From the NCBI RefSeq assembly GCF_003918875.1, contig NW_025766981.1, positions 434,001 to 498,000 on the forward strand: DNA of 64,000 nt. The letters are read 5' to 3'. Origin of the DNA: Haliotis rubra (taxonomy: Eukaryota). Both the position numbers and the translations under genes were made by a program. Within the stretch, counting starts at the first letter, position 1, and every line of letters begins with the position of its first letter. The notes beneath the pieces were generated by a model. That model saw only the letters and a list, made by a program, of their open reading frames with translations, was not told the DNA's origin and searched no databases. Of this stretch, positions 572 through 62,582 are shown in pieces.

Positions 572-3500
572 ATGGATAACATTAAAAAGCAGGACTTAAC
601 GTCGTCCAAAGATGACAAAAGTAGTGATCAAGAAAAGCCAGTGTCTTACACTAAGGATAGAGTTGTAACCACCATCGTTCTGATGCTGTACATGAGTGCC
701 AGTATGCCTTCCGTCCCTTTGTTCACCCAATACATCCATTCTCGCTTTGAGGACTTCTACAGGAACGGCACAAACTCCTCGTCAAGATCGCCCTGTACAC
801 ATTCACCGTGTCTTCGCAACACAAGCGAAGAAGCTGATAAGTTGCAAGTGCACATTCAACAGTCCACGTCGTATGAGGTACTGAAGTTAAGCTTGTCTAT
901 TCAGGTCCCCGCTATCATCGTCAACGTAGTCGTTGGGTCCTACTCGGACCACATCGGCAGGAAGATGCTGTTTATATTGCCGCTGCTAGGATGTATTTGT
1001 AAATATGTAGGTTTCATGCTGGTTGTCAAGTTCCATCTTCATCTCAACTTCATCATCCTCGGGACTCTCCTGGACGGTTTTTCCGGTTCAACAAGCACCT
1101 TCCTTCTTGCCACCATGGCCTATGCAGCCGACGTGACGAAGACCCAAACAACCAGGACATTCGCTATAGTAATTGCCGATAGTTCGGTGGCCACCGCCTT
1201 AGCATTAGGACAGCTTATGACAGGATTCCTTATTGAGAAGCTTGGCTACTTCTACCCATCAGTCATTAATACATCTTTAATCCTTCTTGCCACAACCATC
1301 GTCATATTTTGCCTTACGGAAACAGTAAAGAAAACGGAGGTAAAGGAACTTTCGCCTGTAGTTCATTTAAAGAAAGTGTTTGGATTTTACGTCAACAAAA
1401 GCGGAGTCAATAAGCGTTTCATATTTATTGCCTCTGTGATTGTCTTTGCCCTACTAACCATTGTGAATAATGGTGTAAACTCAGTAGAGACATTGTATCA
1501 GCTGGGTCGACCCTTCTGTTGGGACCCTGAAGAGATAGGTTACTTCAGTGCTTATTCCACAGTATTCATGACCATTTGCGGACTCGTTGCCATCAAGCTT
1601 GGGTCAGCGTGCGTGAGGGTGGAGATTCTTGCTGTGACAGGGATGTTCTTACAGATGGGGTCTCTCATTCTGGAAGGCCTGGCCAGCACAGACGCCATGC
1701 TGTATTTGGGTAATATGCTATATTTGTCTTAAAAATAACTATGCAGAACTTTACAAATTGTACAATTCTTTATTCCCTAAACACATAGGTTAAAGCTCTC
1801 AGTAGAGTGTTTGCACAATTTACACTCACTTCTGTTTGTTTGTTATTTAATGCCGCACTCAGCATTATTCCAGCTATATGGCGGCGTTCTGTTAATAATC
1901 GAGTCTGAACGAGACAATCCAATGATCAACGGCATGAGCATCAATGTACGCAACCTGGATGTGTCAATCAAGTCAGCGAACCTGACCTCCCGATGCCGTT
2001 AGTCGCCTGTTACGACAAGCATGGGTTGCTGAAGACCCGGTGTTTCGCTGGTGCTACACTCACTACTTACAGAGCACGTAAACCTTGTATATTTAGGATA
2101 GGATCTCCACATGCCATGACACTTACTTTCGTCACTGGTTCTATTCCCAATTTCCTCTGGTTATCTCATACGGTTTCTCAGCACCATGCCAGTTGTTGTG
2201 GCCAGATGTCGCCACATTTCACTTCGGGCTTTCGTCTCACATAAGACTGCGTTCGTGGTCTAGTGGAGAGCGCGTCAGCCGAAGGTTAGTTGTTCGAACC
2301 TTGGATCCCTAGCATACCAAATGGTGCTGAAAGATGGTGCTTGTTGTTTCCCGGCCTGGTGCACATTCAGGGCACAAAACAAGGACTGCTCGGCCCAGTG
2401 TCAGTATACTGAGTGGGACATCCATGATACTGCAAATGGTATCTCAGAGGGCGAGCTGGCATTAAAACCTCGCATTTCGGGACTACTGCAAGCAGACAGA
2501 AATCACATCTTACCTAACCTCACCTCCCTCTCGAAGCCGCGTTACTTAAATACCACAATAGCAATCCAGGTCCTAATTTTCGTTACTGCCATTTCATGTG
2601 TATTGCTTGAGAGAAATGCCTAGATTATTGACGTTAGAGATACTTACTAACATTTTGGATAATTTAGATCAGTATTAGTAACGTGAATTCAGAAAGTTTT
2701 ATCCTGCCCCTTTTTTCGTAAAGTGTATTTGCAGAACTCTGGAAAACATATAGCTTTATAAAAATGATTTTGTGGCAATGATGGACATGTGTATGTGTAT
2801 AAATCTGGTCTCATCGCTAAATGGCTGAAATATTGCCGATGCGACGTAAAATCTCAATTCACTGAATCAAACACATATCAAATTATAATAATTTGATTAA
2901 TTTTATACTGATATTTGTATATATCTTATAATTGTATATATATTATATTTGTGTATGATTGATATTTGTTTACATTTTATATTTGTATACATTTCATAAT
3001 GTTGATAGCCTGAAGAGACTAGGTGTCATAATTTAAAGTAAATTGTTTTACGGGCATATTATTTCAGTGCCCTTTGTTGGGTCATTCAGTGGTGTGTCGG
3101 TGTCTGTGATTCGGTCGGTGATGTCGCACATGGTGGATCCTCAGGAACAAGGTATGTACTGATGGATGTGTCAATACCATAGCACATAGGACGCGGTTAT
3201 TCAAACGTTTTAAGAGCAGGTGTCCGTTCTCAATATATTCCACCATTGACCACAGTTTTACGTTGCAGGCATTATGTTCAAATATAACTCTGTAGGCCAA
3301 AAGGCAACTTTTATTGTGCATTCATTGATTTTAGAAAGGCTTTTGATTATATTGACAGGAACCAATGCTTATATTTACTCATGCAAAGAGGATGCCATGG
3401 TAAAATGCACAATCTTTTAAAAAGTATGTATGGAAATGTAAAAGCAAATGTAAAGGTTGGTTGCTCTAAAACTTCCTTCATAGCACCTCTAGTAGCGTAG

Positions 3501-4984
3501 GACAAGGGTGCGATTTGAGCCCTGTCCTGTTTATGTTCTTTATCAATGAGTTTGTGTATGTGTGGGGGCGGTTGGGTAGCGTAATTGTTAAAGCGTGTGC
3601 TCGTCACACTGATGACCTGGGTTTGATTCTCCGCATAGGTACAATGTGTGAAGCCCATTTCTGGTGTCCCCTGCCGTGATATTGCTGGAATATTGTTAGA
3701 AGCGGCGTAAAACCATACTCACTCACTATAAAAGGAGGCTGCTTGTGATCATGGTATATTTGTTATCCAAAATATTGAAGATCTAATGTTACTCTAATTG
3801 CCAATGACATTGTGCTTATATCGTATACTGTTTGGGGCTCGCAGTAACTGTTGTAAGGTGCATATTGCTGACACTGTCACTGTAGATGAACAGGTATTGT
3901 TTTAATGCAGTACTTGTACTTCCTTCGTACCAGGTGCAATCTTCTCCAGCATGGCTACCGTCGACACCCTGAGTGGAGCTATTGGGAGTGCGACCTTCAC
4001 CTTCCTGTACAGCGCAACGGTCGATACAATAAGAGGGACGGCGTTCTTAGTAATGGCGGCCGTCATTTTTATGGCCGCTGTGACTAGGTAACCTGTTCAA
4101 AAGTATATGACTGCTTGATGCGTGTGTTTGTTTTTCAATCATCTGAGCGGTGGGGTAGCCTAGTGGTTAAAGCGTTTGCTCGTCACGCCGAAGACCCAGG
4201 TTCGATACCCCGCATGGGTACCATGTGTAAAGCCCATTTCTGGTGTCCACCGCCGTGATATTTCTGGAATATTGTTAAAGGCGGCGTAGAACCAAACTCA
4301 CTATCTCACTTTCAATCATCTCTTGGAATCATCGAATTATTGTTCGAATCTCAGATTCAGTATAATACAATGGTTGACAAATTATACCTTTGATTTAAAC
4401 GAAAAGTTTTCTTTTATGTTACTATAGGTTTTCCAACGAAACAAACCGGAAGGATAAATGTTGCCTTAACCCAAGTTTCAGTTACATGTCACTTGTACTC
4501 AGTCCCATTATGACCCAACCGTTGTTAACCTCATGATGTTTCGATTAATGTCTCCTTGGCTTTCTGACAAATTATCGGGGCGGCAGTGGTTAGAGCGTTC
4601 TCTCGTTATGCCGAAGACCCAGGTTCGATTCACCAAATGGGTATTATGTATGAAACCCATTTGTGGTGTCCCCCTCCGTGATTTGCTGGAATATTACTAA
4701 AAAGCGGCGTTAAACTAAACTCACTCACTCACTCTGACAAACTGAAACTAATCATTGTTAAAAGATACATTAAAAGACTCGTCTTTTACGCTTTTTTTGT
4801 TTTCAGTGTGGTAATTGTATGGTCTCCAAAACAACCGGACTATGTCCTGCTTATTTCTCCACGTGAAGATGAAGATACACCTGGAACTGGATGTAGCCAG
4901 GAAGATACAGCTGGAACAAAATTGCTGAGAGGACCACCTCAGAAAATATATTTAACCATTAAGAAACATCCTGCTGTTGTATGA
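572..4984 (+). CDS. SLC46: SLC46-family MFS transporter (PCFT/SLC46A3-like), paralogue 1, about 517 aa
   Basis: Exons 572-1709, 3068-3151 (84 nt), 3934-4087 (154 nt), 4807-4984 (TGA). All introns are GT-AG, phases 1/1/2, and the frame stays open. Family motifs: GSYSDHIGRK (loop 2-3), YAADVT, LYQLGRPFCW, IRSVMSHMVDPQEQGAIFS. C-tail contains YVLL. Confidence 0.9.
1833..2040 (-). mobile_element. Family B element
   Basis: Reverse consensus match. Confidence 0.78.
2250..2530 (+). mobile_element. Degraded SINE family C copy
   Basis: gtggtctagtgg head, cataccaa, ggtgcttgttgtttcccggcctgg, acaaggactg, tcagtata, ggtatctcag. Confidence 0.6.
3216..3850 (+). mobile_element. Degraded LINE RT fragment in intron 2 of paralogue 1, split by a SINE
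   Basis: Translates in pieces to STIDHSFTLQAL, CAFIDFRKAFDYIDR, KSMYGNVK, GQGCDLSPVLFMFFINE. Confidence 0.75.
3564..3727 (+). mobile_element. tRNA-Asp-like SINE (family A, about 165 bp)
   Basis: Family consensus ggggcggtggggtagcctagtggttaaagcgttcgctcGTCacgccgaagacccgggttcgattcc...gcggcgtaaaactaaac(tcac)n; more than 20 copies in the window. Confidence 0.8.
4145..4309 (+). mobile_element. SINE family A
   Basis: Consensus match; TSD tttcaatcatct. Confidence 0.88.
4577..4732 (+). mobile_element. SINE family A
   Basis: Consensus match with a short head deletion. Confidence 0.8.
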
Positions 4985-10792: not shown

Positions 10793-13700
10793 ATGGACAG
10801 CGTACAAGAACAGCCTAATGTAAAGTCACAGGAAACCGCTAGTAATGTTCATGACAAACCCAAGTCTTACATCAAGGAGAGGGTCATATCAAGCGTGGTT
10901 CTGATGCTTTTCACGTGTGCCAATAACTCCTCCGTCCCTTTGTTCACCCAGTACATCCATTCTCGTTATGAGGACGTCTACAGTAACGGCACACACTCCT
11001 CGTCAATATCGACAAATAAACAATCATCGTGTCTTGCCAATGCCAGCGAGGAAGCTGTTGAGGTGGAGGTACGTGTTCAGCAGTCCACATCTTTCGAGAT
11101 CTTGAAGCTATGCCTGTGTTTTCAGATTCCCCCGGTCATCGTGAACATGGTCGTGGGGTCCTACTCGGACCACATCGGTAGGAAGCTGTTGTTTGTTTTA
11201 CCGATGCTAGGATGTACTTGTAAATATGTAGGCTTCATACTGGTAATCAAGTACCATCTTAATCTCAACTTCCTCCTCATCGGGACTCTCCTGGAGGGGT
11301 TTTCCGGTTCAACAAGCACCTTCCTCCTCGCCAACATGGCCTATGCAGCCGACGTGACGAAGACCCACGCCACCAGGACATTCGCTATAGTGATGACAGA
11401 TAGCTCGGTGTCTATCGCCATAGCATTAGGACAGGTTATGACAGGATTCCTTATTGAGAAGCTTGGCTACTTCTACCCATCAGTCATTAATACAGCTTTA
11501 ATTCTTCTTGCCACAGCCATCGTCATATTTGGCCTTACGGAAACAGTAAAGAAAACGGAGGTTAAGGAACTTTCGCCTGTAGTTCATTTAAAGAAAGTGT
11601 TCGGATTTTACGTCAACAAAAGCGGAGACAATAAGCGATCCATATTTATTGCCTCTGTGATTGTATTTGCTCTGCTGTCCATTGGACTGAATGGTAAAGG
11701 TGCGATTGAGATATTGTATCAGCTTGGTCGACCTTTCTGTTGGGATCCTGTAAAGATAGGTTACTACGGTGCCTATTCCACAGTGTTCATGACCATTAGC
11801 GGACTTGTTGCCATCAAGCTTGGGTCAGCGTGCGTGAGGGTGGAGATTCTGTCTGTAACAGGGATGTTCCTACTGATGGGGTCTCTCATTCTGCAAGGCC
11901 TGGCCAGCACAGACGCCATGCTGTATTCGGGTAATGTTAACACTTATGTCTTTATGTACATAATAATGCTCTCTAGATAATGCATGAACGCATTTCGATA
12001 ACCAATGGCTCAACAGGGAGTAGACTGTTTGATGAACACTCATTTTGCATAAATTCGCAGGAGTCGATTTAACCTTATAAAGCATACATTGGTGCAACTT
12101 GGCATTTAAACATTATAAATGTACATTTGTAGCTAGTATTAAGCAAGTAACAAAACATCATATTCACCGCAGTACGTCACTAGTCTCAGTGTAGTGTGTG
12201 ATACGTCATTGTTCCTTGCATCAACAATTGTCCTTCATGATTATGGGCACACCGGGCAAAAGAAAGTTATCACTTTTAAAGTAATTGCATAAAAAACCAA
12301 AACCCTGGTACAGGTTTGAATCCAAGCAGAAAACACTCACCGAAAACATGGTCTCGATAACAACGCATTTTTCACAACGTGGAAAACGTAGTTATGGGAC
12401 ATTGGTCCAAATGCACATGCATGATTATGGCATAAATACCGAAAATAAAAACACAACGAGCTTGCCAAGACTTACGCACGTAACGAGACAGGGCGGTCGG
12501 TATGGCCAATATGGGGGCTTCACTGCGTTAGGTGGCAAGAACTTTCAACTGCAACCAGCCCATCATCAGCAAATTGATAAACTGCTACCAGCAAACAGGC
12601 TAGACCCAAGACTGCCCAAGATAGCGAAGACCGACCGAAGACCACTATATCCGGCAGATCCGGCTCCGGAACAGATTCGTAACGGCGCCCCCGAAAGCCC
12701 AGCGATACAGGGATGAAGTGTTCAGACCTTTTGTGACAACAGCCAAGAAGAGTCATTTTGCAGCACGACAACACAAGGTCTGACACCGCCAGAATCGAGA
12801 AAACCTGCACACAGTTAATGTCAACCTACTGCTTTGGCCAGTGCTTTCTCCAGATGTGAACAATACCAGCATTACAATGAATTTTCAGTCAATATACTGG
12901 AAAATAATTTCTGTTTGTAAAATAATTATCATAAATCTCACATACGTCTTTGTTTCTAGTTTTGGGTCAAGTGAAGTCAGTGATACCTAGCCCGGTAGTT
13001 ATATTGTCATACACAACCGCCTGTGTACTGTCATACTGCGTGGTAAAAGTTTATTTGCATGAGCTTTGTCGCCCTCTTACCTGTTTGAGAGATCAGATCA
13101 TTGATTGATAATTGTACTACCTTGTTTACTTCAGTGCCTTTTGTGGCGTCCATAAGCTCCGTGTCGATACCTGTGACCCGCTCCGTTTTGTCCAGCATGG
13201 TGGAAGCTCATGAACAAGGTATGATCTAGTTCTAAGATGTCGACGGATACACATGAAAAAGTAACACAAGACAAGACAAGACAAGAATTTTATTGTATTC
13301 AAGGCCTCCGGCCCACATACAGTTTACAGAGTTATACATAAGTATTATTTTTTTTACAAGTCAATTGTAACTAATTTTTCAGCAATTCATCTACTGGAGT
13401 GTTTTATAAAAAATGACAGATTTCTAATATTTTGTTCATGGTAAGAACATAATAGTGATTTAAAAGCTACATCGGGGGTCGGGGGGGTGTGTGGCTGGGG
13501 GGTTGACAGATAATACTCTAGTATATATTTCTTTCTAAGGTCAGCATATGATTTACAGTTAAAAGTGAAGTGAATTTCGTTTTCTACTGCTTCTTTGCAT
13601 AATGGACAGATTCTTTGATTTCTCTCAATGGACGTTTTTCTTCCTTCATTTATCATCATATTTAGCAAACCTAGTCTACATTTTATAAACTTATGCCTTA

Positions 13701-16373
13701 AATCGTTGCATCTAGGTACAGATAAATATTTTTCTTGTTGTAGTAAAGTTTTAAATGTCCTTAACAATCATAGCGTGTGCTATTATTCAAACTTGATTGC
13801 CATTCCTGGTGAAACATATTAATAGCTCGATTGCGAAAATCATTAATAAATACATCAATATGACCAACAGTTTGGTTTAACCAGACATACCCATAACCGT
13901 GAGAAAACAATAAACATCTTATTCTTGATGCCCAAGTTACTTTGCCAATACTATCTAAGTGAACCAACATATTATAGGACAGTTTTGGAATGTGTTTGTT
14001 AGGCATGTTAATTATTTTAAGCCAGTATTTTAAACATCTTATCTGTGAGTTTATGTAGAGTGGGTATCTCCCGCACTCCCCATACACCCTAATCTTCGGT
14101 GTTGACGATCCAACTCCCAAAAATCTTCTACATGCTAATAAATGTATTTTTTCTAAACAATCGAAACGTTGAAATCCCCATATTTCTGAACCATATAATA
14201 AAATGGGTTGTATTTGGGCATCAAAAAGTTTAAAATATAGACCTAGTGTTAACATTCCAGTCTTGTAAATAATCGGTATTAAGTGGAAAAGAGCTTTCTT
14301 AGCGCGTAGGGAGAGATCATAAAAACTTTTTTTCATATTGAACACCGAGATACGTGTAACAATGAACTGTTTTCACAAGTTGATTACCAAGAAACAATTT
14401 ATCTTTTGGAGAAATTTGACCACCCCTCCGAAAACTAACTACATTGGTTTTATCAAGATTTACTGAGAGTTTCCAGTCCTTGGTGTAATTATCTAGAATG
14501 TTAAAATGTCTTTGTAATTCCGTCACTGTATGTGAGAGTAAAATCACATCATCTGCGAAGAGAAGCATTAACATTTCCAAGTAATCTGGAAACAGTTGAA
14601 TACCATGTTTTCCATAAACAGCAATATCATTATATAATTCACTGATAAAAAATGAAAATAGGATGGGACTGAGGATGCAACCTTGTCGCAAACCTATAGG
14701 ACAATCAAAATAGTCTGTTGTACCCGTTTCACAACGGTCACAGGACTTTATGTTTGAGTACATTTCCTTCAGCATGGAATACATTTTTTTCCCTGAGACC
14801 AGCATCTCTTAAGCAGTTCCAGAGTTTGAACCTATCAACTGTATCGAATGCTTTTTTGAAGTCTACAAATGCAACATTTAATTTATGTTTTCTACATGAT
14901 AAACATTTTTTAATAATAGCATATAAAGTGAAGATATGATCAGTCTTGGAGTAGTTTTGTCTAAACCCTGCTCGTGTTTCTGGAATTTTACCACGCATAT
15001 TTGCCCACTGGGATATCCTTTTGTTCAACATTGTTCAAATATCTTCCCTAATGGTGTGACTATACAACCGACAAAAAGTAAGAGAATTGATACTTAGTAT
15101 TATAGTGTTATGAGCCCTCTCATAAGGTCCGTAAAATTAGATCAATATCAATATCAATATCACAATAGTGGGCGACAGATGCAATGTTCCAGCTATATGG
15201 CAGCGGTTTGTAAATAATCGAGTCTGGACCATACAATCCAGTGATCAACATCATGAGCATCGATCTACGCATTAGGGATACGATGAAATGTGTTACCCAA
15301 GTCAGCGAGCCTGACTACCTGATCCCGTTAGTCGCCTTTTACGACAAGCATGGATTGCCTTCATCTGTGAAGGTCTGGATTGGAATTGGTCATGAGCAAC
15401 CCATGCTTTTCGTAAGAGGTGATTAACGGGTTCTGGTGGTCAGATTCGCTGACTTGGTTAACACATGTCATCGTATCCCAGTTGTGTAAATCGATGCTCA
15501 TACTGTTGATCACTGGATTGTCTGGTCCAGACTCGATTATTTACAGACAGCTGTCATTTAACTTGAACATTGCTGAGTGCCTCCATTAAACAAACAACCA
15601 ACCATCAACCAACCTCTTCACCAGTATATGTCGACATTTTGGCTGATTGTCGAGATTCTCTCTCGAAGGCATTTTTAAGTGTGCGCTCGGCCCTTGCACT
15701 AGTGATTGTGAGTTCCACAATAGATGTTGATGCTGTTGCTGTTGATGCCTGTGCTAACACATATTTCTCATGCACTAGGTGCTATCTTCTCCAGCATGGC
15801 TACCGTCGAAACCCTGTGTGGAGCTATAGGGAGTACGGCCTTCGTCTCTCTGTACAGAGCCACAGTGGGTACCATGAGAGGAATGACGTTCCTTGTTATC
15901 GCGGCCGTCGTGTTCATGGCCGCCATAATGAAAATGTATGTAACCCACAACCGTGACATTTTTAATGAAACATGTATCAAAATATCCAGTTAAAAAATAT
16001 ATTATAATAACTCCGTGGTCAATCAATACTGGTTTGTTTGGGTTTATTTCAAAAAGTATGACTCTTATCTGAGGTACTATTCAAAGAGCTTATTTTGCCA
16101 GGATCTGCAATAAGTCGTAATTTCAGGTTGTCTTCAAATGCTTCGAATACCACTTTTACACTCTATGAGTAAACACGAGTAATTATCTAAGCAGATTTGA
16201 CGTTATTGTAACACTTACGCTACATCTTCTTTTCTAGCGTGGTAATTGTGAAGTCCCCCAGGCAACCGAGCTATGACATCTTTCAGTCGCCACCAGAAGA
16301 TCAGAAGGCGCAAACTCCTGACCACAACCAATATGGAACAATTCCGAAAGGAGAAAACAATACACCATGCTAA
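10793..16373 (+). CDS. SLC46: SLC46-family MFS transporter, paralogue 2, about 504 aa
   Basis: Exons 10793-11930, 13135-13218, 15779-15935, 16238-16373 (TAA). GT-AG introns with the same phases as paralogue 1. Motifs SDHIGRK, YAADVT, PFCW, EQGAIFS. Tail has YDIF and YGTI. Confidence 0.92.
13266..15051 (-). mobile_element. 5'-truncated non-LTR retrotransposon (RTE-X-like LINE) in intron 2 of paralogue 2
   Basis: Frameshifted RT: AGFRQNYSKTDHIF, FVDFKKAFDTVDR, GLRQGCILSPILF, LLFADD, YTYLGV; C-terminal CPLC...EIHF..NC. The 3' end on - is AATAAA followed by (TCTTG)n. Clade assignment is inference. Confidence 0.88.
15185..15612. mobile_element. Two family B elements head-to-head (15185-15357 on -, 15364-15612 on +)
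   Basis: Consensus matches in opposite orientations. Confidence 0.82.
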
Positions 16374-19982: not shown

Positions 19983-20200
19983 GGCTCTATACAAAAAGAT
20001 GAAGGTCGAACTCCCCATAGCTCCACACAGGGTTTCGACGGTAGCCATGCTGGAGAATCTTTCGCACCTAGTGCATGAGAAATATGTGTTAGCACAGCAA
20101 CAGCATCAGCATCTATTGTGGAACTCACAATCACTAGTGCAAGGGCCGAGCGCACACTTAAGGATCTCGACAATCAGCCAAAATGTCGACATATAAGTGA
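19983..20200 (-). pseudogene. Inverted SLC46 exon-3 fragment with its upstream intron
   Basis: Reverse complement matches 15615-15860 (intron end plus MATVETLCGAMGS...LYRA). A 2-nt insertion follows the acceptor, and the exon is truncated. Confidence 0.85.
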
Positions 20201-41500: not shown

Positions 41501-41526
41501 CATATATGTCTGTCTGTCTGTATCCA

Positions 41527-44687: not shown

Positions 44688-44827
44688 NNNNNNNNNNNNN
44701 NNNNNNNNNNNNNNNNNNNNNNNNNNNNNNNNNNNNNNNNNNNNNNNNNNNNNNNNNNNNNNNNNNNNNNNNNNNNNNNNNNNNNNNNNNNNNNNNNNNN
44801 NNNNNNNNNNNNNNNNNNNNNNNNNNN
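44688..44827. other. Assembly gap
   Basis: Run of N. Confidence 1.
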
Positions 44828-49790: not shown

Positions 49791-49989
49791 NNNNNNNNNN
49801 NNNNNNNNNNNNNNNNNNNNNNNNNNNNNNNNNNNNNNNNNNNNNNNNNNNNNNNNNNNNNNNNNNNNNNNNNNNNNNNNNNNNNNNNNNNNNNNNNNNN
49901 NNNNNNNNNNNNNNNNNNNNNNNNNNNNNNNNNNNNNNNNNNNNNNNNNNNNNNNNNNNNNNNNNNNNNNNNNNNNNNNNNNNNNNNNN
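49791..49989. other. Assembly gap
   Basis: Run of N. Confidence 1.
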
Positions 49990-51314: not shown

Positions 51315-54300
51315 ATGGAGACGAGTCTAACAATATCGAAAGAACATAAAAAGGTCAGTACCATTTTCGGAGGGGTGATGGTTTCTGTGATCTTGACACT
51401 TTACACGTGCGCCGTCATGGCAGGGGTGCCACTTCAGAGCCAGTACGTGAGGCACAGACTCCTGCAAGAGTACACGAACACCAGTAACGCCAGCGACATC
51501 TTCGCCTCATCGTGCGACAACGACACCGTACAGGACATGGACATCCTACAGATGGTTCAGGAGGACACTGCTCGCCGACTCCTCTACTTCTCCCTCAGTG
51601 GCAGCATCCCGTCAATTCTCGTGAATCTCGTGTTTGGCTCGTATTCCGATTTCTTGGGAAGGAAGATTCTGTTCCTTTTACCTCTATGTGGAGACCTGTT
51701 GAAGAACATTCTTTCCGCTTTGATAATACGATATAATTGGAGTTTAACATTATTTTATGCGGGCAGCGTAGTTGGAGGATTTTGTGGATCTTTCACTACG
51801 ATTCTTCTCGCCTGTTTCTCTTACACTGCTGATATTACACCTCCACAGAAATCCCGTACAATCGCTATAGCTTTGTTAGAAACAGTTCTGGCTGTGGCAT
51901 CTTCTGCAGGGTCTCTAGTCACCGGATACCTTATCAGCTCCCTAGGGTACTTCTACCCCTCGCTCATGATCGCCATCCTCCTCGCCGTCGACGTACTCAT
52001 CGTCATATTCCTGCTGCCGGAGACGCTTAAGAATGTCGAGCACATTATTATATCGCCAATTGTACATCTGAAAAAGTGTTTCGGATTTTACACGATATAC
52101 GGGAGCGGTTTAAAGCGGATTAAATACAACGTGTGCATGGTCATCTTGTTCTTTGGCGTCATTAGCCTGATCGGACGGACGTCCATAGAAACCCTGTATC
52201 AGCTGGACTTGCCGTTCTGCTGGAACTCCGTGAAGATAGGATACTACGGCGCCCTGCGTATTGTTATCCAGTCCATATGTAGTGTCCTGGCCATCAAGAT
52301 GCTCCAGCCTTGCCTCCGGGACGAAATCATCGCCATCATCGGGATGCTGTTTGGGGCGGCCTCTCTAGCCATGGAAGCGTTTGCGACAACAGATTGGATG
52401 ATGTATATAGGTAAACACTTATAAATCTGTATAACTATAACCCACCAATGATGAGTAGTTTGCGTGGACATTAGATTGTTGTCATGTAGACCCGTGAAGA
52501 TCCGGGTTAGAATTGGTCTTCAGCAACCCTTGTCGTAAGAGGCGACTAGCGTGATCGGGCTGTCAGGCTCGGTGACCTGGTGACACATATCATCGTATCC
52601 CAGTTTAGATCGGTGACCATGCTGTTGATCACTGGATTGCCTGCTGCAGACTCGATTGTTTACAGACCGCCGCCATACAGCTGGAATGTTGCTAAGCGTG
52701 GCGTTAAACAGCAAGCAAACAAAACATTGTAATGCAACTTTGGGGGCCGGGGTAGCCTAGTGGTTAAAGCGTTTGCTCGTGACGCCGAAGACTTGGTTCG
52801 ATTCCCCACATAAGTACACTGTGAAGCCTTTTCTAGTGTCCCCCGCCTAGATATTGCTGAAATATTGCAAAAAGCTCCCTCACTTCAGTTAGGCGTGACT
52901 TAATGACAGTATGTTTAACATGAATTAATATACTTTTATCGGTGATCACAAACACAGGGACCCGTGAAGATCCGGGTTAGAATTGATCTTCAGTAACCCA
53001 TGCTTGTCGTAAGAGGCGAATATCGGGTGGTCAGGCTCACTGACTTGGTTGACACATGTAATCGTATCCACGGAGGTATCCAATATCAACAAAATCTTGT
53101 GGTCGCCTTGAGGCCGAAGGGAAATATAATAACGGGCGATAAATGTTAAGCCCACAGGAGGTAACTCTATCACGATTATTTACAGACTGCCGTCATATAG
53201 CTAGAATATTGTCTCAGTGGGGCGTAAAACTAAACTCACTCACTTTTCTGTGTTGCAGTGCCTGTTGTGGGAATCTGTGCCTACACAACCGTTCCGATAT
53301 TCAGAGCCATCATGTCACGCATGACGTCACCGAAAGAACAAGGTAAGCCATGACGCTGAGACCATTCGGTTTGTTGTGTTGTTTACGGAAAGGGTCGAAT
53401 GGTGGCGAATGGGATGGGTGTTGACTAACGTCTCTCTCTCTTTATTTATATATATTGATAAAATAGTTCCTTTTAAATTGAAAAGGAGCCAGTGAGACGA
53501 CATATCCTGAAATGAGGTAATCTAAACTACAGATAACTGGTCTACAGTCTTTGTGAAATCCAAACATGGAACTATTTTGTCGACTGTCGAAGAAGGTGTG
53601 AGTAGTAAGACGGATGACGTCACTCAAAACCGTTGTGCTGTGTATTAATGCTCCTCCATGGTAATAAGGATGGAGATGATCTGTGCTGAAATGGTGTGCC
53701 TTTATAGGATATAAACAGATTACTTCACTCGTGCAGTAATGTTTAAGTACTTGTGCAGTAATGTTCACAGTATATAATTACTAATCGATATGTTCAAAAC
53801 ATTTACTTTTGTTATATTTTTATCCCCCCGGCATGTAATGCGGGGGGATATAGTCGTCGCCTCGTCCGTCCGTCCGTCCGTCCGTCCGTCCGTAATCATT
53901 TTGTTTCCGGAACTCCAAGAACATTCGATATTTTTCAACCAAAAATTGTAGATATATCAAACAGAACCTAAGGTGGTGCCTTTTGCTATTTACAGATTTT
54001 TGGCATTTTTGTTTTTCTCAGTTTCCATGGAAACGTTTTGGACTTAGTCTTAAAGGGAGGGGCAGGCTTCGTTTCCGGAGCATAACTCAGAAACCGTTCA
54101 GTATTTTTCTGCAAAACTTGGTAGATATATCAAACAGAACCTAAAGTGGTGCCTTTTGCTATTTACAGATTTGTGTGATTTATTATTTTCTTGGTTTCCA
54201 TGGAAACGATTCGGACTTAGTCTCAAAAAGGAATGGTGGGTTTCGTTTCCGGAGCACAATTCGAAAACTTCTTAATATCTTTCAGCAAGCTTGGCAGATA

Positions 54301-54470
54301 TGTTAGGCAGATCCCAAAGTGGTGCCTTTTGCTATTTGAAGATTTTTGTCATTTATGTTTTTCATGATTTCCATGGAAACGATTTGCACTTAGTCTAAAA
54401 TCAAGCTGGACTTTAAGTAACTGTCAGATGATTTGTTCTTTCAAAGATTTTGGGGCCGGGGGGATATGTC

Positions 54471-54527
<57 letters not shown>

Positions 54528-56565
54528 CCTATCCGTCCATTCCATCTTTCGGTTTGTTTAACAACGCACTCAGATATATTCGAATTATATGTATGGCTTG
54601 ACATACTGAGCGACATGCCATCCTGCAGGTTATGTTCATTGCGTCGCCTCCTACCACCAGCGGGAGTTGCTGGGGACCCTTTCTAACCCAGATCCCCAAC
54701 ACCGACTTACTGAAAAATACCCCCAAATTCTATACCTCTCGCCTTGTACTCTGCAGGTGCCTTGTTCTCCAGCATCGCCGCCATGGAAACTGTCTGCTCC
54801 ACCGTGTCCATCACGCTATACAACACCGTCTACGAGCTGACTGTAGGGACCATGAAGGGGGCAGTGTTTCTCATGATGTCCGGCTTCTGCGGCCTTACAG
54901 TCCTTCTTATCTTGTGAGTCTCTTTACACGTGGACATTCATCTCAATGCACTGATATAATTGAAACATAAAATGGGCGTAAGGCATGACTTTATATCTAT
55001 GATTAATGGACACAAACTGACGGACAGATTTTATTGGTATATATGGCCCGGAGGCCAACAGTACAATGTAAATATATTGTACGGAACACAGTGACAGCGC
55101 TACCATGCAATACGACGTAAATAGCATACCATAAATAGACAATGCTATGGGAAATAAACAGTTATTGTTGATGTGATCTATTGCGATTTATATGCTATAG
55201 TATTAAGGCTAACTTGTACAGTAGCTGCACGTCACTCGTTGTTAAAACAGCAATAAACTTTTCTTTTGATTGTTGTCTAAATTGACACATACTATTTACA
55301 TTGTCACCTTCTATGTCTATTTATTCTTTCTACGCGTATGGAAATGATACATAAGATCAACGTAATATTCCATCAATCCAGCAATGTGTTAATGGCCCAT
55401 GATATTATAACAACGAATGTGTATGTATTCAGATGGCTTCCCTTACAGTGAGTGGGTGAGATTGGTTTTATGCCGCTTTTGGCAATATTCCAGCAATATC
55501 AGGACGGGGACACCAGAAATGGGCTTCACATATTGTACCCATGTGGGGAACCGAACCCGGGCTTTCGGCGTGACGGGCGAACGCTTTAACCACTAGGCTA
55601 CCCCACCGCCTCTTCCCTTACAGACCCATTTTATATTTGTTTCTCGTCTATGCAGTCCAATGTGAGTGAGTGAGTTTGATTTTACGCCGCTTTTAGCGAT
55701 ATTCCAGTAATATCACGGCGAGGGACACCAGAAATGGGCTTCACATATTGTACCCATGTGGAGAACCGAACCCGGGCTTTCGGCGTGACGGGCGAACGCT
55801 TTAACCACTAAGCTACCCCACCGCCTCTTCCCTTACAGACCCATTTTATATTTGTTTTTCGTCTATGCAGTCCAATGTAATCATCCCCAGTTCAGATCGG
55901 AAAGTAAGATACGATATACAGTAGCATTCCAACTGAATTCTCTTTTCTCCGAGGCAGTGGGGTAGCCTAGTGGGTAGCGTTCTAGCGGTTAAAGCGTTCA
56001 CTCGTCACGCCGAAGACCTAAAGAATGGGATTCGATTCCCCACATGGGTACAATGTGTGAGGCCCCATTTTGGTGTCCCCGGATTTGATGTTGATATTGC
56101 TGGAATATTGCTAAAAGCGGCATAAAACTAAACTCACTCACTCTCTTTTTCCCAAATGAATAGGGTGAAGGGGTATATTGGACAGTGATTACATTTTAGC
56201 GATCACTCTCATAAATTACATAAATAAACATTTCTGTGGTGTCCCTATCTTTAGAGCATACAAGTATAGTTTGGACAATAGTTTATGTTGATATCAGTTG
56301 CCATGACAATTTTACAATACTTATCAACACTCGATCGAGACTTTGTAATGTATACGTGTGGAGTTACGTCCCTTGGTTGAGATGATCTGCCTGTTGATTA
56401 TGCCTGTATGAAGACTTATTTGCATATACATTTTTCACTAGGATGTTCATGGTCATCTCAAGAAGTTCCCCTTCTTCCTACGATTACCTAATTCCGGAAG
56501 AAGATGATGTGCGTTCAGGTGCCAGTGTACTGAATCACGATCACTATGACGACGAAGACGACTGA
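51315..56565 (+). CDS. SLC46: SLC46-family MFS transporter, paralogue 4 (divergent), about 486 aa
   Basis: Exons 51315-52410, 53259-53342, 54757-54913, 56442-56565 (TGA). Motifs GSYSDFLGRK, YTADIT, RTIAIALLE, LYQLDLPFCW, FRAIMSRMTSPKEQGALFS. Tail has YDYL plus an acidic cluster. An acceptor-like tract ending CAG at 51303 suggests an upstream non-coding exon. Confidence 0.92.
52491..52723 (+). mobile_element. Family B element
   Basis: Starts at cccgtgaagatccggg. Confidence 0.82.
52742..52885 (+). mobile_element. SINE family A (degraded)
   Basis: Head and body match the consensus. Confidence 0.75.
52961..53243 (+). mobile_element. Family B element with a foreign insert, ending 15 nt before exon 2 of paralogue 4
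   Basis: 5' and 3' consensus matches. Confidence 0.78.
53817..54472 (+). mobile_element. Helentron-associated non-autonomous element (HINE, DINE-1/pearl-like)
   Basis: T-run then tatcccccgg subterminal repeat with partner ggggggata; (GTCC)n at 53862-53892; about 3 internal units of about 170 bp (gtttccgga at 53904, 54071, 54246); terminal ccggggggata. Confidence 0.78.
54470..54530. repeat. (ATCT)n microsatellite
   Basis: Read directly. Confidence 0.95.
55449..55878 (-). mobile_element. Two SINE family A copies duplicated in tandem with about 50 bp of flank
   Basis: Copies at 55449-55611 and 55663-55827, each followed by cttcccttacagacccattttata...gtccaatgt. Confidence 0.85.
55951..56141 (+). 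mobile_element. SINE family A
   Basis: Consensus match with small insertions. Confidence 0.8.
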
Positions 56566-56569
56566 AACC

Positions 56570-56636
56570 GAGGCTGCACATACCACACGGAGGCTGCACA
56601 TACCACACGGAGGCTGTACATACCGCACCGAGGCTG
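56570..56636. repeat. 20-bp tandem repeat (about 3.5 units) in the 3' UTR of paralogue 4
   Basis: Unit gaggctgcacataccacacg. Confidence 0.85.
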
Positions 56637-57021
56637 TTAGGAGTATTCAAACGATGCGGCTTATGGAATGAGAATTTGTAACTTTAGAAGATGAGAGGGA
56701 CCTCCTCATTCGGCTGTCCCCAACTACAAATGGTGCTGTATATTAAGTATGCATTTGTGTTTGAATAGTTTTTGTCTCGTATATAAAGCAAATGAATGGG
56801 TTTAACTAATACATGATACGGCATCTAGATTCGATTCTAAACGAGCTCATTGTGCAACTGCTCTCTTTACGGGAACAATTTTGAATTTATTAAATATTTA
56901 GCTGCGGTCTTTCCATTGTGTACTGTGATATAAGCGTTCAGACACATCTAATGCAATCTCTCTTTTTGTGATGTGTTATATACTGATTATACACCCTGTG
57001 CGTGTAGCCTAAATATTTCAG

Positions 57022-57233
57022 CAAATGTAACATATGTTCTATTTTGGATTACACTTTCTCAGTATGGTACATATTCTAGTATTTTTGTTTGGTTGAGTCC
57101 GGGATTCGAACCCACTCCCTCAGAGTCAGTAAAGTACTGTACTTTACTGAGAAAGTGTAAACCCAAATATAACATACATTGGATAAACGGGACACGACTG
57201 TATATTACATTTGACCACATTCTAAATGGCATT
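57022..57233. mobile_element. Shorter copy of the 41187 element, 3' of paralogue 4
   Basis: Same inverted ends; gggttcgaatcccgg on - strand; same trailing catttgaccac. Confidence 0.6.
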
Positions 57234-58833
57234 GTGTATTCATCGTTTCAGTATATGGTGTAGATGAATATTGCTTAGTGCATGTTGAAGATATGGGATA
57301 AGAATGTGACTAGTCTCACCAATATTACTGAGGGTACGAGGATATATTCAGTTTAGCAAGTAACAAGATGTTGAGGATAGTACTTGCGTATTTTGGATAG
57401 TACTTCCATGTCTTGAATAGGTATTGCACTTTGTAAATAAGGTGTAATATTACAGAGAGTGCTTTCATATGGTAAAACGTAGTTTCATATTATGAATAGT
57501 ACTTGCATGTCAGACATTACTTTCATGTCTTTAGGTTAGTACTTACATACCACGAATACTTTCATGCAGAAATAATTCTTTCATGACTGTGATGGACAGG
57601 TTTTGCACATTATTATGTATATATGTATATAACTACTTTATAGGTATACGATTGGCATACAATGAATAGAACCTGAATATTATGGATTGGGCTTTCACAT
57701 AGCGGAATATCACATACATTTAATGGTTGTTTTTGCATGTAATGGATGGTACTGGCACATTGAAGGTAGCGTTTCAACAGACTGAGTATAGAATGTTGCA
57801 TTTTGATTGCTGAAACTGGACAGTTAAGCTTGAATCAGTCCGTGAAAAGGAACTTTAACAGTTGTATTCTGAAATTGAAAGAGATGGGAATTGCAGGACG
57901 CGACTTCTCGTAAATGTGTCTATGCACATGACAGACTCATCGACTAGTTCCAGCCATAACCCGTTACATCATTCCTGGATGTGCCTCAACGTCTTCAGCC
58001 ATAGCTAATCAACGTTATCATTCAAATTTGATCATCTCATTTTGTGATTGCGCCAGGTGGGCACATTACTTCCTACTGACTTTATCATGGGCTCCCGTTT
58101 GTTCTTTTGATGGGAGTGTATTTAGTTTATGATGAATATTTTGTTTGATGCACGTTCTGTGTACCATTGCATCTATGATTACACAACACAGCTGAATAAT
58201 ATCTTAATTCTTTTGCAGTTTTTTATATTATTATTTATAGCACCGTTTTACTTAATCTTTTTTATAGGCGTTTACATCTGATATGCATTTAGACAACATA
58301 TTACTGTCTGTATTATGTTGTGCCAATAAAAGACTGATCGGAAATATTTGTTTTTATTTTAAAGTTTGACTTTATATTACATTTATGTGCAGCATCTTAT
58401 GAGATCATCAAGTCGCCATTATCTTCCTTACTTCATCAGGAACAACCGGACACAGGGTTAGTCTGGATGACCCGTTAGTCCGGACACCCAGTCAGACTAG
58501 ACACTCCATTTGGGCACAGTTTTAGACTGGAAATGCCATCGACCCGGAAACCCCTTTGTACGGTTACCCCATTAATCGGGTTGGCCCGGAAACACCGTTC
58601 AGCGAGGTACCCCACCTGCCATAAGTCATTTACAGGAGCTCTGAATGGATGTGTTTGACAATTTGGTCGTTGACAAGGAAATACGTCACCATTGTCTTGT
58701 CAAACAAATTTTTCACAACTGCCATTCGTTTGTTCCGCTGATGGCGTATTAATAAATATGTTAACTGGCTCACATTCTTTGAACTGCTCTTGACATACAC
58801 ATGACACCTCCCTTTAGACTCTTTCTTTGCATA

Positions 58834-59123: not shown

Positions 59124-62100
59124 CTACTGCTGCTCCTCATCAGAGGCATCCTCTTCATCACGCCCTTGTACACAGAGGGTGTTCTGGGGTGACACTGCTA
59201 TCGACCGAGTCTTGAACACAAATACTCTGAAAATGAATGGACGTGATCATTTAACCATTTCGAGGGGCGGTGGGGTAGCCTAGTGGTCAAAGCGTTCGCT
59301 CGTCACGGGTACAATGTGTAAAGCCCATTTTATGTGTCCCCCGCCGTGATATTGCTGAAATATTGCTAAAAGCGGCGTAAAACTAAACTTACTCAAAACA
59401 CAAATTTAACCATTTTGAGAGTCACAAACATTATCCCTTATTCTGTCTGATTGATTCTTGAAATACACCTTTATCACCAAACATTTTTATGATGCGTTAT
59501 TTGTTTTGCGCAAATATATAGCTGCGGTCTGTCAATAATTGAGTCTGGACCAGACCATCCGGCGCTTATATTTAACCATCGTCAAACACGAGTATGTACT
59601 TTCTTTCGCCCGTTTGGTTCAAGTGTAAACCAGAAAGTTCGAACACCTGCAGTACTTACGTCAACAATATAATGGCTACGATTTTGGTGGCCGCCATTAT
59701 GAGAAACACTGCACCGCGCATGACGCTCAGCGTTGCTTCATAGACGACGTTGAGTGAGGTAGACCCGACAGCATCACAGACAGCCTCCACCACAGACATA
59801 CTTGTAAATATGGCACCTACAACAAATTGTCACCTCAATTAACCATTAAACTGAGAGAACCGATTTCTCAGAACACACAAGTGGATTGTTTGCTTTTTAA
59901 TGCCGCATTCAGCAATATTCTACCTATACGGCAGCGGTCTGTAAATATTCGAGTCTGAACCAGAGAGTCCTGTGACGAGCATCATGAGCATGACATGTGT
60001 CAACCAAGTCAGCGAACCTGACAACCCGATCCCGTTAGTCGCCCATACGATAAGCATGGGTTGCTGAAGATCAACTGTAACCCGGACCTTCACGTGTTAC
60101 CCTATACGTGACAAAGTCAACTTAGCATCAACTGATGTGAATGTCGTTAGAAACCTGGCTATGCATATCTATTGTGCAAATTCTTTCAGGGTGACTCATG
60201 TCGATTAATTATATATCAAATTGTCAGAAATGCTAAATGACCACCTGTTGGAACATGTGCCGCAGTCCTACATTCTCCACGAATAAAGACATATCTATCT
60301 AAGCTATATATGAACGTCAGACATCGTTCTACTTTTGAAAATATGCCATGCACATTTAACTGGTTTTTAACAAGATGTTGGCGAACATACTTACCCTGCT
60401 CGTCGGCTGGTACCATTCTAGACAGGATAGCCCGTAATGCTGGTGAGATAGCTGATGAAGCTAAACCCACAACCGGAACTGATACCCGGAAAGAAAGAGT
60501 GAACTGAAGGTAAGTGTAACGTGACAATTGGTAGGTTACATATGTTTAGGTATAAACGTATTTTCTAAATGAGTTATGTACCAATTTACCATGTTCCATC
60601 CTGTTCCTATAGTTTCAATGTTCGGCGTTAATTAAGAACCAGATTTGATACCATGAGTGGAGGGACAATAACAAGGGCAATATATAATACAGAGGATAAT
60701 TGGCTTTTCTTGTCAAATGTATTTCGTCTCGTGACCCGACACAATAACATATTTATCACATCTCGTGACCCGACAAGATAACACATTTATTTAATCTCTT
60801 GACCTGAAAGAAAAGTTTTTTTCATGCGTGCTGCAATGCAAATGTCAGTTGATTCATATCACGAGTTTATTCATATCTTACCGATCTTCATGACCTAAAT
60901 ATTATAACCATTTTGTCTTTGAATTGTGACTGAAAGTTGTAATTTCACTGGAATTCGATATGAATGTTAACGTTTCAGATAAATACAGTATGTCATCACT
61001 AAATGCATAATTAACATAACTACCACTATTTTGGAATATATTTTTAAAGACCCTGGCACTGTTTGGTAGCCCAAAGCTGTAAAATGACTGACATTCATAG
61101 CGAATTTAATTTAAAATCATCAAGTAAAGAATATGATATAAAAGTGATCTAGTGAGTTCTGATTTACGTGACTTTAAGCACTTTTCAGTAATATAATCAC
61201 AAGGGGTGGGTGATTATTATTTTACGCCTCTTTTAACAATATTGCAGCAATATCACGGCGGGGGGGGGACACCGGAAATGATACCCATGTGGGGAATCGA
61301 ACCCGGGTCTTCGGCGTTACAAGCCGCCTCATTATAACAAGGATAACACATGTGGAGTATCGAACCCAGCCTTCGGCGTGACGAGTCAATACCTTAATAA
61401 GTAGGCTACCTTATAACACATAGCACCCACCTAAGTACAACATCCAGTCCACGAAAGCAAGGCCTTGTACAATTTTAGATGCAGCTGCAGACATGAAGCC
61501 GATGATACCAACTATACCGTCCGTGGTGCAGACGTGGAGGGCCTTAATGATGACGACACTGCTGAAGTAGTAGACGCCGTACTTCAGGGCACCGTACAGT
61601 CCCAGTTTGACAGAGTCCCAGCAAAAGGGCGGACTCAGCATGTACAAGTTCTCGATATTTACTGTGCCATGCTCGTCTATCATCTTAAACAAGAAAACGC
61701 TTATACAGATCCAGAATAGGGCACGGTTACCTGTAGCCCCTTTTCTAAAATAAAAACCAAACACATTTTTACGGCCGCAATGGGAGAGATACAGGCCCTA
61801 TTTCTTTTGACCGTTTCCGGAAGCAGGGTCACCACGACAAGGAGGTCCAGCATTGTCAAGGCAGCCATCCCCACAGACGGATACAGGTAGCCGTTAATCT
61901 GAATCAAATACCCAGTGGCTATGTGTAGAGATATCTCAGCGATACCCCTGGCTGCATCCACCACAGCCAGTGCCACGGTTCTCACTTTAGCAGGTGGGGT
62001 AATGTCTGCCGTGAACGCGTACCCCGCTAGGTAGAAGGTGAAGCTAGACCCACACAATCCGTCAGCGCCGTACCCGATGAAGAAATAGCGAAGGTCCAGA

Positions 62101-62582
62101 TTCCATGCGATGGTAGCAACTGTCGTGAGGTCTCTGGTGATTCTCCCCACCAACATGGTCATGAACAAGAACCGGCGTCCGAAATAGTCCGAATAGGCTC
62201 CAAGAAATAGGTTGGTGAAGATAGCAGGGATGCTTGTAGCGAGGGTGAGCTGCATGTTGAGGTTGGTCGCATCTCTCTGGACCTCATCCTGGAGGTCGGA
62301 GTCCGCTGCGGTGTTGTTGACAACACATTGACCGTGAGACGTCTTCCTTTCCGGATACGTTGAGTTTGGAAAGTACTGTTGGCTGTATCGCAGGTATAGG
62401 TACTGGGACATGAGTGGACTGTGGATAGCAGAGGAGCCGCCATGGAGGAACAGGATGAGGCTGACGAGGAGCAGGCGGCCGATTTGGGTGGTCTGGTGGT
62501 TTCCAGGAACAATGTTCTGGTCGCCGACATCTTTAATGAGTGGTTCTGTCTCACGTCCTTGGTTGATGTTTTCGTCCTCCAT
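59124..62582 (-). CDS. SLC46: SLC46-family MFS transporter, paralogue 5 (divergent, convergent orientation), about 498 aa if the 1-bp frameshift is corrected
   Basis: Exons 62582-61431, 60478-60395, 59816-59660, 59226-59124 (TAG). Motifs GAYSDYFGRR, FTADIT, LYMLSPPFCW, LRAILSRMVPADEQGAIFT. The two provided ORFs (293 aa and 117 aa) join if the A5 run at 61766-61770 is A6. Confidence 0.82.
59262..59395 (+). mobile_element. SINE family A (B box deleted)
   Basis: Flanked by atttaaccattt duplication. Confidence 0.8.
59884..60096 (-). mobile_element. Family B element
   Basis: Reverse consensus match. Confidence 0.78.
61205..61410 (-). mobile_element. SINE family A fragments
   Basis: One degraded copy plus a second head fragment. 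Confidence 0.7.

What the first reader, a model, noticed from the sequence alone, without database searches (positions are those of the whole stretch)
572..62582. Tandem array of five SLC46 transporters plus orphan fragments: candidate diversified small-molecule or PAMP uptake locus
Seen: five genes with the same intron positions, three recent paralogues, two old ones and three pseudogene pieces in 64 kb. Established: mammals have three SLC46 genes, which carry folate (A1), muropeptides and cGAMP (A2) and lysosomal catabolites or muropeptides (A3); SLC46A1 also has an 84-nt (28-aa) phase-1 exon at this position. Inference: birth-and-death expansion suggests substrate diversification, either innate-immune sampling of microbial ligands or uptake of dietary metabolites. 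This is the best candidate for an undescribed system here.
Basis: partly seen in the sequence, partly recalled or inferred. Interest (0 to 1): 0.75.

Follow-up and report, generated by a model that had tools for sequence, protein, structure and literature searches.

The report
Abalone SLC46 transporter gene array
This stretch of the blacklip abalone genome holds five neighbouring genes for SLC46-type membrane transporters plus three broken leftovers: a real but ordinary duplicated gene family, already machine-annotated, whose cargo is unknown and probably not folate.

Summary
The window is Haliotis rubra scaffold QXJH01000310.1, 434001-498000. It carries five SLC46-family MFS transporter genes: A, B, C and D on the + strand, E on the - strand. 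All have four coding exons, a phase-1 first intron, an 84-nt exon 2 and a 157-nt exon 3 (154 nt in A). Three gene fragments are also present.

The two N gaps lie in the C-D spacer, outside every exon. The same gene order in H. asinina supports C-D adjacency.

A-D match RefSeq proteins named "SLC46A3-like". E has no H. rubra protein on record. In the window it is one base short at 61766-61770. Other runs carry frame-restoring forms, so this is probably a segregating null allele or a consensus slip.

The duplications predate the H. rubra/H. asinina split. Synonymous-site mosaics show gene conversion among A, B and C. A variable TM7 patch is paralogue-specific, but positive selection is not significant.

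The best structural relative is chicken PCFT. The PCFT gating salt bridge is kept. The folate-specific residues Arg156, Asp164 and His289 are lost in all five, and Tyr323 is lost in A-D.

The scan found a second six-gene SLC46 array on the same scaffold before. An immune or PAMP-uptake role is untested. Verdict: a new member of a known kind, of modest interest.

The parts
572..4984 (+). Gene A, 4 exons (572-1709, 3068-3151, 3934-4087, 4807-4984), 517 aa
   Evidence: Exons 1-3 match P0004 (XP_046575200.1) exactly. The NCBI model reads through the donor to a TAA at 4089-4091. Exon 4 matches the C-terminus of the H. asinina orthologue P0006.
10793..16373 (+). Gene B, 4 exons (10793-11930, 13135-13218, 15779-15935, 16238-16373), 504 aa
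   Evidence: Reproduces P0003 (XP_046575152.1) exactly. A LINE reverse-transcriptase fragment lies in intron 2.
19983..20096 (-). Relic: 5' part of exon 3 plus 26 nt of intron
   Evidence: 89% identical to B 15750-15861.
24453..24896 (+). Relic: exon-1 piece (codons about 84-230) with +2 and -1 indels
   Evidence: 92% identical to B, 90% to C.
28214..31992 (+). Gene C, 4 exons (28214-29351, 30397-30480, 31388-31544, 31839-31992), 510 aa
   Evidence: Reproduces P0001 (XP_046575154.1) exactly. Modelled as a 12-TM MFS protein, pTM 0.77.
32520..32889 (+). Relic: orphan exon-2 copy (32520-32696; open frame and AG/GT kept) followed by 3'-end-like sequence (32694-32889)
   Evidence: 88% identical to C exon 2. 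A counterpart at the same relative position exists in H. asinina, L005 28264-28399.
44688..44827 (.). Assembly gap 1, in the C-D spacer
   Evidence: No SLC46-like coding sequence nearby. Not filled.
49791..49989 (.). Assembly gap 2, 1.3 kb upstream of the D start codon
   Evidence: It may lie in D's promoter or 5' UTR. Not filled.
51315..58340 (+). Gene D, 4 exons (51315-52410, 53259-53342, 54757-54913, 56442-56565), 486 aa, plus about 1.8 kb of 3' UTR
   Evidence: The model equals P0038 (XP_046575155.1). Contigs of the probable RNA run X11 cover about 56430-58337. An AATAAA signal lies at 58325.
59124..62582 (-). Gene E, 4 exons (62582-61431, 60478-60395, 59816-59660, 59226-59124), 498 aa if read with X at the break
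   Evidence: 87-93% identical to the H. asinina and H. cracherodii orthologues P0025 and P0026. dN/dS is 0.14-0.18 on both sides of the break.
61766..61770 (-). One-base shortfall in exon 1 of E (T5 on the + strand)
   Evidence: The H. asinina orthologue has one more base. The X1 contig has +A behind 61770. One X5 contig has +T behind 61765. X4 and the rest of the X5 depth match the window.
1397..1486 (+). Variable TM7 patch (codons 276-305; same codons in B 11618-11707 and C 29039-29128), flanked by homogenised tracts (codons 205-275 and 306-378)
   Evidence: Sliding dS/dN. TM7 is helix 280-311 in the model.

Best explanation
This is a tandem array of five SLC46-family major-facilitator transporter genes in the blacklip abalone. 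It is one of at least two such arrays on the scaffold.

Shown:
- The array arose by repeated tandem duplication before the Haliotis species compared here diverged.
- It has since turned over by further duplication (H. asinina) and by decay to fragments (H. rubra).
- Gene conversion keeps homogenising parts of exon 1 among A, B and C.
- Each product has the PCFT-like 12-helix fold, with broken TM4 and TM10.
- Each keeps MFS motif A, the TM5 acid-TM10 arginine gate pair, and the TM11 acid.
- All five lack the TM4 Arg-Asp pair and the TM7 His, and A-D lack the TM8 Tyr, which PCFT uses for folate binding and proton coupling.

Inferred:
- They work as proton-coupled alternating-access carriers of small organic solutes.
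- Their cargo is not classical folate, and the paralogue groups probably differ in specificity.
- D is transcribed. E is intact in some haplotypes and carries a one-base null or consensus slip in the assembled one.
For: - Family: Pfam MFS_1 hits on all five genes. PCFT 7bc6 is the only strong PDB sequence hit (E 3.6e-47; the next is about 5e-4). It is also the top fold hit.
- Gene models reproduce RefSeq proteins.
- Tree: A pairs with H. asinina P0006. B is sister to H. asinina P0005, P0008 and P0009. C groups with H. cracherodii and H. rufescens proteins. D and E have 1:1 orthologues.
- The H. asinina array is collinear: A, four B-type copies, C, D, E(-).
- Gene conversion: rubA-rubC dS is 0.04 and 0.08 in codons 205-275 and 306-378. 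Orthologue dS in the same tracts is 0.16-0.25, and dS in codons 1-120 is about 0.8.
- Purifying selection on orthologues: D has dN/dS 0.14, E 0.14-0.18, C about 0.1.
- Residue mapping onto chicken PCFT: R156 becomes T, S or Y. D164 becomes S. H289 becomes G, V, S or D. Y323 becomes T or S (Y in E). E193 becomes D or E. R384 stays R. E407 becomes D or E.
- Read evidence for D and E.
Against: - No transport, localisation or tissue data exist for any copy.
- Expression was checked only over D's last exon and over E, with contigs of one probable RNA run from a coded organism B.
- Proton coupling is inferred from three conserved charged residues only.
- Lack of the folate determinants does not exclude folate-like or other anionic cargo bound differently.
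- Orthology to vertebrate A1, A2 or A3 was not tested. The name 'SLC46A3-like' is NCBI's.
Confidence: 0.8

Rival explanations
1. Innate-immune sampling locus. The paralogues import bacterial muropeptides or cyclic dinucleotides into the cytosol for NOD-, PGRP- or STING-type sensing, and their diversification tracks microbial ligands.
For: - Mammalian SLC46A2 and A3 and Drosophila CG8046 mediate muropeptide delivery (PMC11509177).
- An SLC46A3-like transcript was induced in mussel haemocytes after Vibrio re-exposure (PMC6697025).
- Cavity positions differ between paralogue groups.
- Birth-and-death turnover resembles that of immune gene families.
Against: - There is no expression, challenge or ligand evidence for these genes.
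- Orthologue dN/dS values of 0.1-0.2 indicate ordinary purifying selection.
- The TM7 replacement excess is not significant.
- Gene conversion homogenises rather than diversifies most of exon 1.
- No immune genes lie in the window.
Confidence: 0.12
2. Redundant folate or vitamin uptake. The copies are PCFT equivalents, duplicated for dosage or tissue-specific expression without any change of substrate.
For: - PCFT is the closest solved relative by sequence and by fold.
- The Glu193-Arg384 pair and the Glu407 equivalent are kept.
- The intron positions are shared with SLC46A1.
- NCBI names one scaffold neighbour 'proton-coupled folate transporter-like' (P0033).
Against: - Arg156, which binds the folate gamma-carboxylate, its partner Asp164, and His289 are replaced in all five genes.
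- Tyr323 is replaced in A-D.
- None of the Haliotis SLC46 proteins retrieved keeps the Arg156-Asp164 pair.
Confidence: 0.08
3. Subfunctionalisation by expression only. The copies carry the same non-folate cargo, for example lysosomal catabolites or conjugated sterols as reported for SLC46A3. They differ in tissue, stage or membrane, and the sequence differences are near-neutral.
For: - Whole-gene dN/dS among A, B and C is 0.42-0.51, with no significant site excess.
- N- and C-terminal tails, which are candidate sorting regions, are the most divergent parts.
- Most core cavity residues are identical among A, B and C.
Against: - D, E and the A-C group differ at several cavity positions and are only 35-40% identical.
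- The TM7 patch is identical between the C orthologues of two species yet differs between paralogues, which suggests paralogue-specific constraint.
Confidence: 0.3

Closest known systems
SLC46A1 / PCFT (chicken PCFT structures 7BC6 and 7BC7)
   Same: 12-TM MFS fold with broken TM4 and TM10. Motif A (GxxSDxxGR[KR]). A TM5 acid-TM10 Arg gate pair. A TM11 acid. An extracellular TM1-TM2 loop with N-glycosylation sequons and Cys. An 84-nt phase-1 exon at the same residue.
   Different: 27% identity. The TM4 Arg156-Asp164 pair and His289 (human His281) are absent in all five. Tyr323 is absent in A-D. Most of the coding sequence lies in one large first coding exon. The tails are longer.
SLC46A2 and SLC46A3 (mammals) and Drosophila CG8046
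   Same: Same family by NCBI naming. Multi-copy in an invertebrate, as in Drosophila. Proposed carriers of muropeptides, cGAMP or lysosomal catabolites.
   Different: Orthology was not tested here. No functional, localisation or immune-challenge data exist for the abalone genes.
Second H. rubra SLC46 array on the same scaffold (P0019, P0035, P0033; earlier notes s1-329543 and s1-329526)
   Same: A tandem SLC46 array with relics and a variable TM7. Same scaffold, starting about 121 kb past the window end.
   Different: A different clade, 30-40% identical and sister to E in the tree. It has Glu at the Arg156 position and Asn at the Glu407 position.

Membership tests
Major facilitator superfamily | Pfam MFS_1 match above the gathering score | tested here: met
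   All five exon-1 products score 41-57 bits against a cut-off of 33.4.
Major facilitator superfamily | Twelve transmembrane helices in two six-helix bundles | tested here: met
   The AlphaFold model of C has pTM 0.77 and 12 TM helices plus a linker helix. At least 443 MFS structures match at E <= 0.001.
Major facilitator superfamily | Motif A (G-x-x-x-D-x-x-G-R-[KR]) between TM2 and TM3 | tested here: met
   GSYSDHIGRK in A-C, GSYSDFLGRK in D, GAYSDYFGRR in E. S125, D126, G129 and R130 are invariant in 31 sequences.
SLC46 family | Closest characterised relative is an SLC46 member, well apart from other MFS families | tested here: met
   PCFT scores E 3.6e-47 against 5e-4 for VMAT2 by sequence. 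By fold it scores E 3e-18 against 3e-9.
SLC46 family | Discontinuous TM4 and TM10 | tested here: met
   The model's helices break at 171-172 and 384-386, as described for PCFT in PMC7612623. This is model-based only.
SLC46 family | Shared intron position: 84-nt phase-1 exon before TM11 | tested here: inconclusive
   The abalone exon spans codon 380 position 2 to codon 408 position 1. This corresponds to chicken residues 369-397 and human residues 361-389. The human c.1165/1166 boundary is inferred from a title cited in PMC8978580. The c.1081/1082 boundary comes only from my own memory.
SLC46A1 (proton-coupled folate transporter) | TM4 Arg156-Asp164 pair (chicken numbering): folate gamma-carboxylate binding and proton site | tested here: not met
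   Thr/Ser in A-C, Ser/Ser in D, Tyr/Ser in E. Residue roles are from PMC7612623.
SLC46A1 (proton-coupled folate transporter) | Glu193 (TM5)-Arg384 (TM10) salt bridge, and Glu407 (TM11) | tested here: met
   Asp or Glu, Arg, and Asp or Glu at these positions in all five genes.
SLC46A1 (proton-coupled folate transporter) | Tyr323 (TM8) and His289 (TM7; human His281) | tested here: not met
   Position 323 is Thr in A-C, Ser in D and Tyr in E. Position 289 is Val, Gly, Gly, Ser and Asp in A-E, never His.
SLC46A2 / SLC46A3 orthology | Phylogenetic grouping with vertebrate A2 or A3 | not tested
No vertebrate sequences were retrieved. The three word searches returned molluscan proteins only.

The most novel reading that the evidence does not exclude
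Selection keeps paralogue-specific cavity residues apart (TM7 and the positions equivalent to PCFT 156, 289, 323 and 407), while gene conversion homogenises the rest of the scaffold. Together with the second array on the scaffold, Haliotis would then hold a battery of a dozen or more SLC46 carriers with distinct ligands, some serving uptake of microbial or algal small molecules such as muropeptides or cyclic dinucleotides for cytosolic sensing.
Probability: 0.15. Interest if true: 0.6.

Novelty: new member of a known kind. Interest (0 to 1): 0.3.

Why it matters
SLC46 carriers link nutrition (folate) and innate immunity (muropeptides, cGAMP) in mammals and flies. Molluscs have no adaptive immunity and live with dense microbial and algal exposure.

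A genus-wide family of at least 12 genes that lacks the folate determinants is a reasonable place to look for new SLC46 substrates. It is also a tidy example of gene conversion and birth-and-death acting together.

As it stands, it is a machine-annotated family expansion with no functional data. It is useful for abalone genomics and aquaculture immunology, and not surprising to a transporter specialist.

Tried and rejected
- **Word-index protein searches.** The three searches returned only molluscan relatives, so orthology to vertebrate A1, A2 or A3 stays open. I withheld the large profile search because the family is not in doubt.
- **Exact-protein look-up of P0001** found only the genome contig and no transcript contig. 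It gave no expression evidence for C.
- **The look-up of sequencing runs** listed no run on record as RNA. X11 is RNA only by the tool's guess. Its contigs stop at D's AATAAA signal, which supports that guess.
- **Positive selection in TM7.** Fisher tests of replacement against silent changes in TM7 versus the rest of exon 1 gave p 0.08-0.7. This is not significant, so I do not claim positive selection.
- **Continuity across the N gaps.** The flanks have no informative matches in the window, and the spacer is not conserved at nucleotide level with H. asinina. Only gene order supports continuity.
- **Human c.1082 exon boundary.** Literature searches for it found nothing.
- **Folate-transporter reading** rejected on the residue mapping.
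- **E as an old pseudogene** rejected. There is one break only, no other stops, and dN/dS is 0.14-0.18 on both sides.
- **Joined models.** I built joined exon models of A, D and E (E with X at the break) only inside scripts, for local alignment and trees.
Full report
**Source and identity.** The large ORFs at 572, 10793, 28214 and 51315 (+) and at 62582 (-) all hit Pfam MFS_1. Exon 1 of the third gene finds chicken proton-coupled folate transporter (PCFT, 7bc6) as the only strong PDB relative. With the full protein P0001 the match is E 3.6e-47 over residues 40-457. A word search returned a 100% identical RefSeq protein of Haliotis rubra. An exact look-up placed gene C at 462214-465992 of scaffold QXJH01000310.1, so the window is 434001-498000 of that scaffold.

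**Gene models.** A splice search reproduced P0004, P0003 and P0001 exactly for genes A, B and C. D and E were built from orthologue-guided tblastn matches and GT/AG sites. The D model equals XP_046575155.1.

All five genes share one architecture:
- a first coding exon of about 1.1 kb ending in phase 1;
- an 84-nt exon 2;
- a 157-nt exon 3 (154 nt in A);
- a terminal exon.

The NCBI model of A (459 aa) reads through the exon-3 donor to a TAA at 4089-4091. An intact exon 4 at 4807-4984 matches the C-terminus of the H. asinina orthologue and gives 517 aa.

**Gaps.** The N runs at 44688-44827 and 49791-49989 lie in the spacer between the orphan exon-2 copy (which ends at 32696) and the D start codon (51315). 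No SLC46-like coding match lies between 32654 and 51312, so no reading frame crosses a gap. The flanks gave no test of continuity. The only support is that H. asinina has the same order: C orthologue, D orthologue, E orthologue on the opposite strand, with a 10.5-kb C-D spacer. A copy hidden in a gap cannot be excluded.

**Fragments.** Self-comparison confirmed three relics.
- 24453-24896 is an exon-1 piece, 92% identical to B, with two frame-breaking indels.
- 19983-20096 (-) is an exon-3 piece, 89% identical to B.
- 32520-32696 is an orphan exon-2 copy, 88% identical to C, followed by 3'-end-like sequence. It has a counterpart at the same position in H. asinina, so it predates the species split.

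**Gene E.** Relative to H. asinina, the window lacks one base in a homopolymer run: T5 at 61766-61770 on the + strand. No H. rubra protein for E is in the database apart from the window's own ORF.

Public contigs were laid on 56430-62429.
- Run X1 (organism A, depth about 134) has an extra A behind 61770.
- One X5 contig (organism B) has an extra T behind 61765.
- Both insertions restore the frame, giving ...AAVKNVF....
- A short X4 contig (organism A, depth about 7) and the remaining half of the X5 depth match the window.

So intact forms exist, and the short form appears in runs beyond the assembly. I rate a real segregating null allele at about 0.65 and a consensus slip at about 0.35. These are contigs, not reads. 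dN/dS against the H. asinina orthologue is 0.14 before the break and 0.18 after it, so any inactivation is recent.

**Expression.** Contigs of X11 (the tool guesses RNA) cover about 56430-58337 continuously. That is D's last exon plus 1.8 kb, and the coverage ends 7 nt past the AATAAA signal at 58325-58330. They give no depth on E exons 1-3. D is therefore very probably transcribed in that sample, and E was not seen in it. I could not test expression of A, B and C.

**Evolution.** A maximum-likelihood tree of 36 proteins shows:
- A pairs with H. asinina P0006 (support 100/99);
- B is sister to an H. asinina trio;
- C groups with H. cracherodii and H. rufescens proteins;
- D and E each have 1:1 orthologues.

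The H. asinina array is collinear but has four B-type copies where H. rubra has B plus two B-derived relics. This is birth-and-death turnover.

The Nei-Gojobori analysis gave these values:

| Comparison | Region | dS |
|---|---|---|
| A vs B or C | codons 1-120 | 0.74-0.80 |
| rubA vs rubC | codons 205-275 | 0.04 |
| rubA vs rubC | codons 306-378 | 0.08 |
| rubra-asinina orthologues | same two tracts | 0.16-0.25 |

Whole-gene dN/dS is 0.42-0.51 among A, B and C. dS in the two tracts is below the orthologue values, so gene conversion has acted within H. rubra since the species split.

Between the two tracts, codons 276-305 have dN/dS of about 0.8-1.2 between paralogues. This stretch is the first part of TM7, helix 280-311 in the model. 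It is identical between the C orthologues of the two species. The replacement excess there is not significant (p 0.08-0.2). These results bear out two other first-reader notes on this window (s1-333131, s1-333146), without proof of positive selection.

**Mechanism.** The AlphaFold model of C has pTM 0.77 and 12 TM helices, with breaks in TM4 and TM10. Its best fold match is PCFT: E 3e-18, TM-score 0.83 normalised by target, and nine orders of magnitude ahead of VMAT2.

I mapped the PCFT residues described in PMC7612623 through the HMMER alignment and a family alignment.
- Kept in all five: motif A, the Glu193-Arg384 gate pair (as Asp or Glu with Arg), and Glu407 (as Asp or Glu).
- Replaced in all five: Arg156 (to Thr, Ser or Tyr), Asp164 (to Ser), and His289.
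- Tyr323 is replaced in A-D (Thr or Ser) and kept in E.
- None of the Haliotis SLC46 proteins retrieved keeps the Arg156-Asp164 pair.
- These positions differ between clades and are mostly conserved within them.

My inference is that these are proton-coupled alternating-access carriers of non-folate organic solutes, with specificity differing at least between the A-C group, D and E.

**Comparison with what is known.**
- A-D are RefSeq 'SLC46A3-like' proteins.
- SLC46 expansion in a gastropod has been remarked on.
- This scan already reported a six-gene SLC46 array beyond the window's end on the same scaffold, starting about 131 kb out. I had met it independently as L001.
- With P0015 on another scaffold, H. 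rubra has at least 12 SLC46 genes.

**Verdict.** This is a real, well-resolved and ordinary family array. The immune reading is possible but unsupported.

Noticed in passing
window 4089-4984: The RefSeq model of gene A (XP_046575200.1, 459 aa) ends at a read-through stop. An intact fourth exon at 4807-4984 matches the tail of the H. asinina orthologue, so the annotated protein is probably truncated.
   Followed up: yes
window 56566-58340: Contigs of a probable RNA run cover D's last exon and 1.8 kb downstream, ending at an AATAAA signal (58325). This indicates a long 3' UTR for D.
   Followed up: partly
window 13387-15031 (-): A LINE-type reverse-transcriptase fragment (Pfam RVT_1) lies inside intron 2 of gene B.
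   Followed up: partly
window 33766-34454, 41444-42659, 63340-63798 (all -): Broken Tc1/mariner-type transposase copies (DDE_3, HTH_Tnp_Tc3_2) lie in the spacers.
   Followed up: partly
window 29789-29950 and more than 20 other places: A dispersed SINE-like repeat of about 160 bp sits in introns and spacers of the array. It reaches very high depth in all runs laid (compare note s1-333166).
   Followed up: no
window 5026-5565, 8469-8810, 20950-22091, 36110-36594: Minisatellites: 96/233-nt units just downstream of gene A, 21-nt units, 41 copies of a 28-nt unit between the two B-derived relics, and 42-nt units.
   Followed up: no
L001 (QXJH01000310.1 619457-640587): More SLC46 genes (P0019, P0035; P0033 on the same scaffold) start about 121 kb past the window end. 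They form a clade sister to E.
   Followed up: partly
L004 1-1390 (H. asinina CM074533.1): A 483-aa MFS gene lies just upstream of the A orthologue in H. asinina, so the array may extend beyond the window's left edge in H. rubra too.
   Followed up: no
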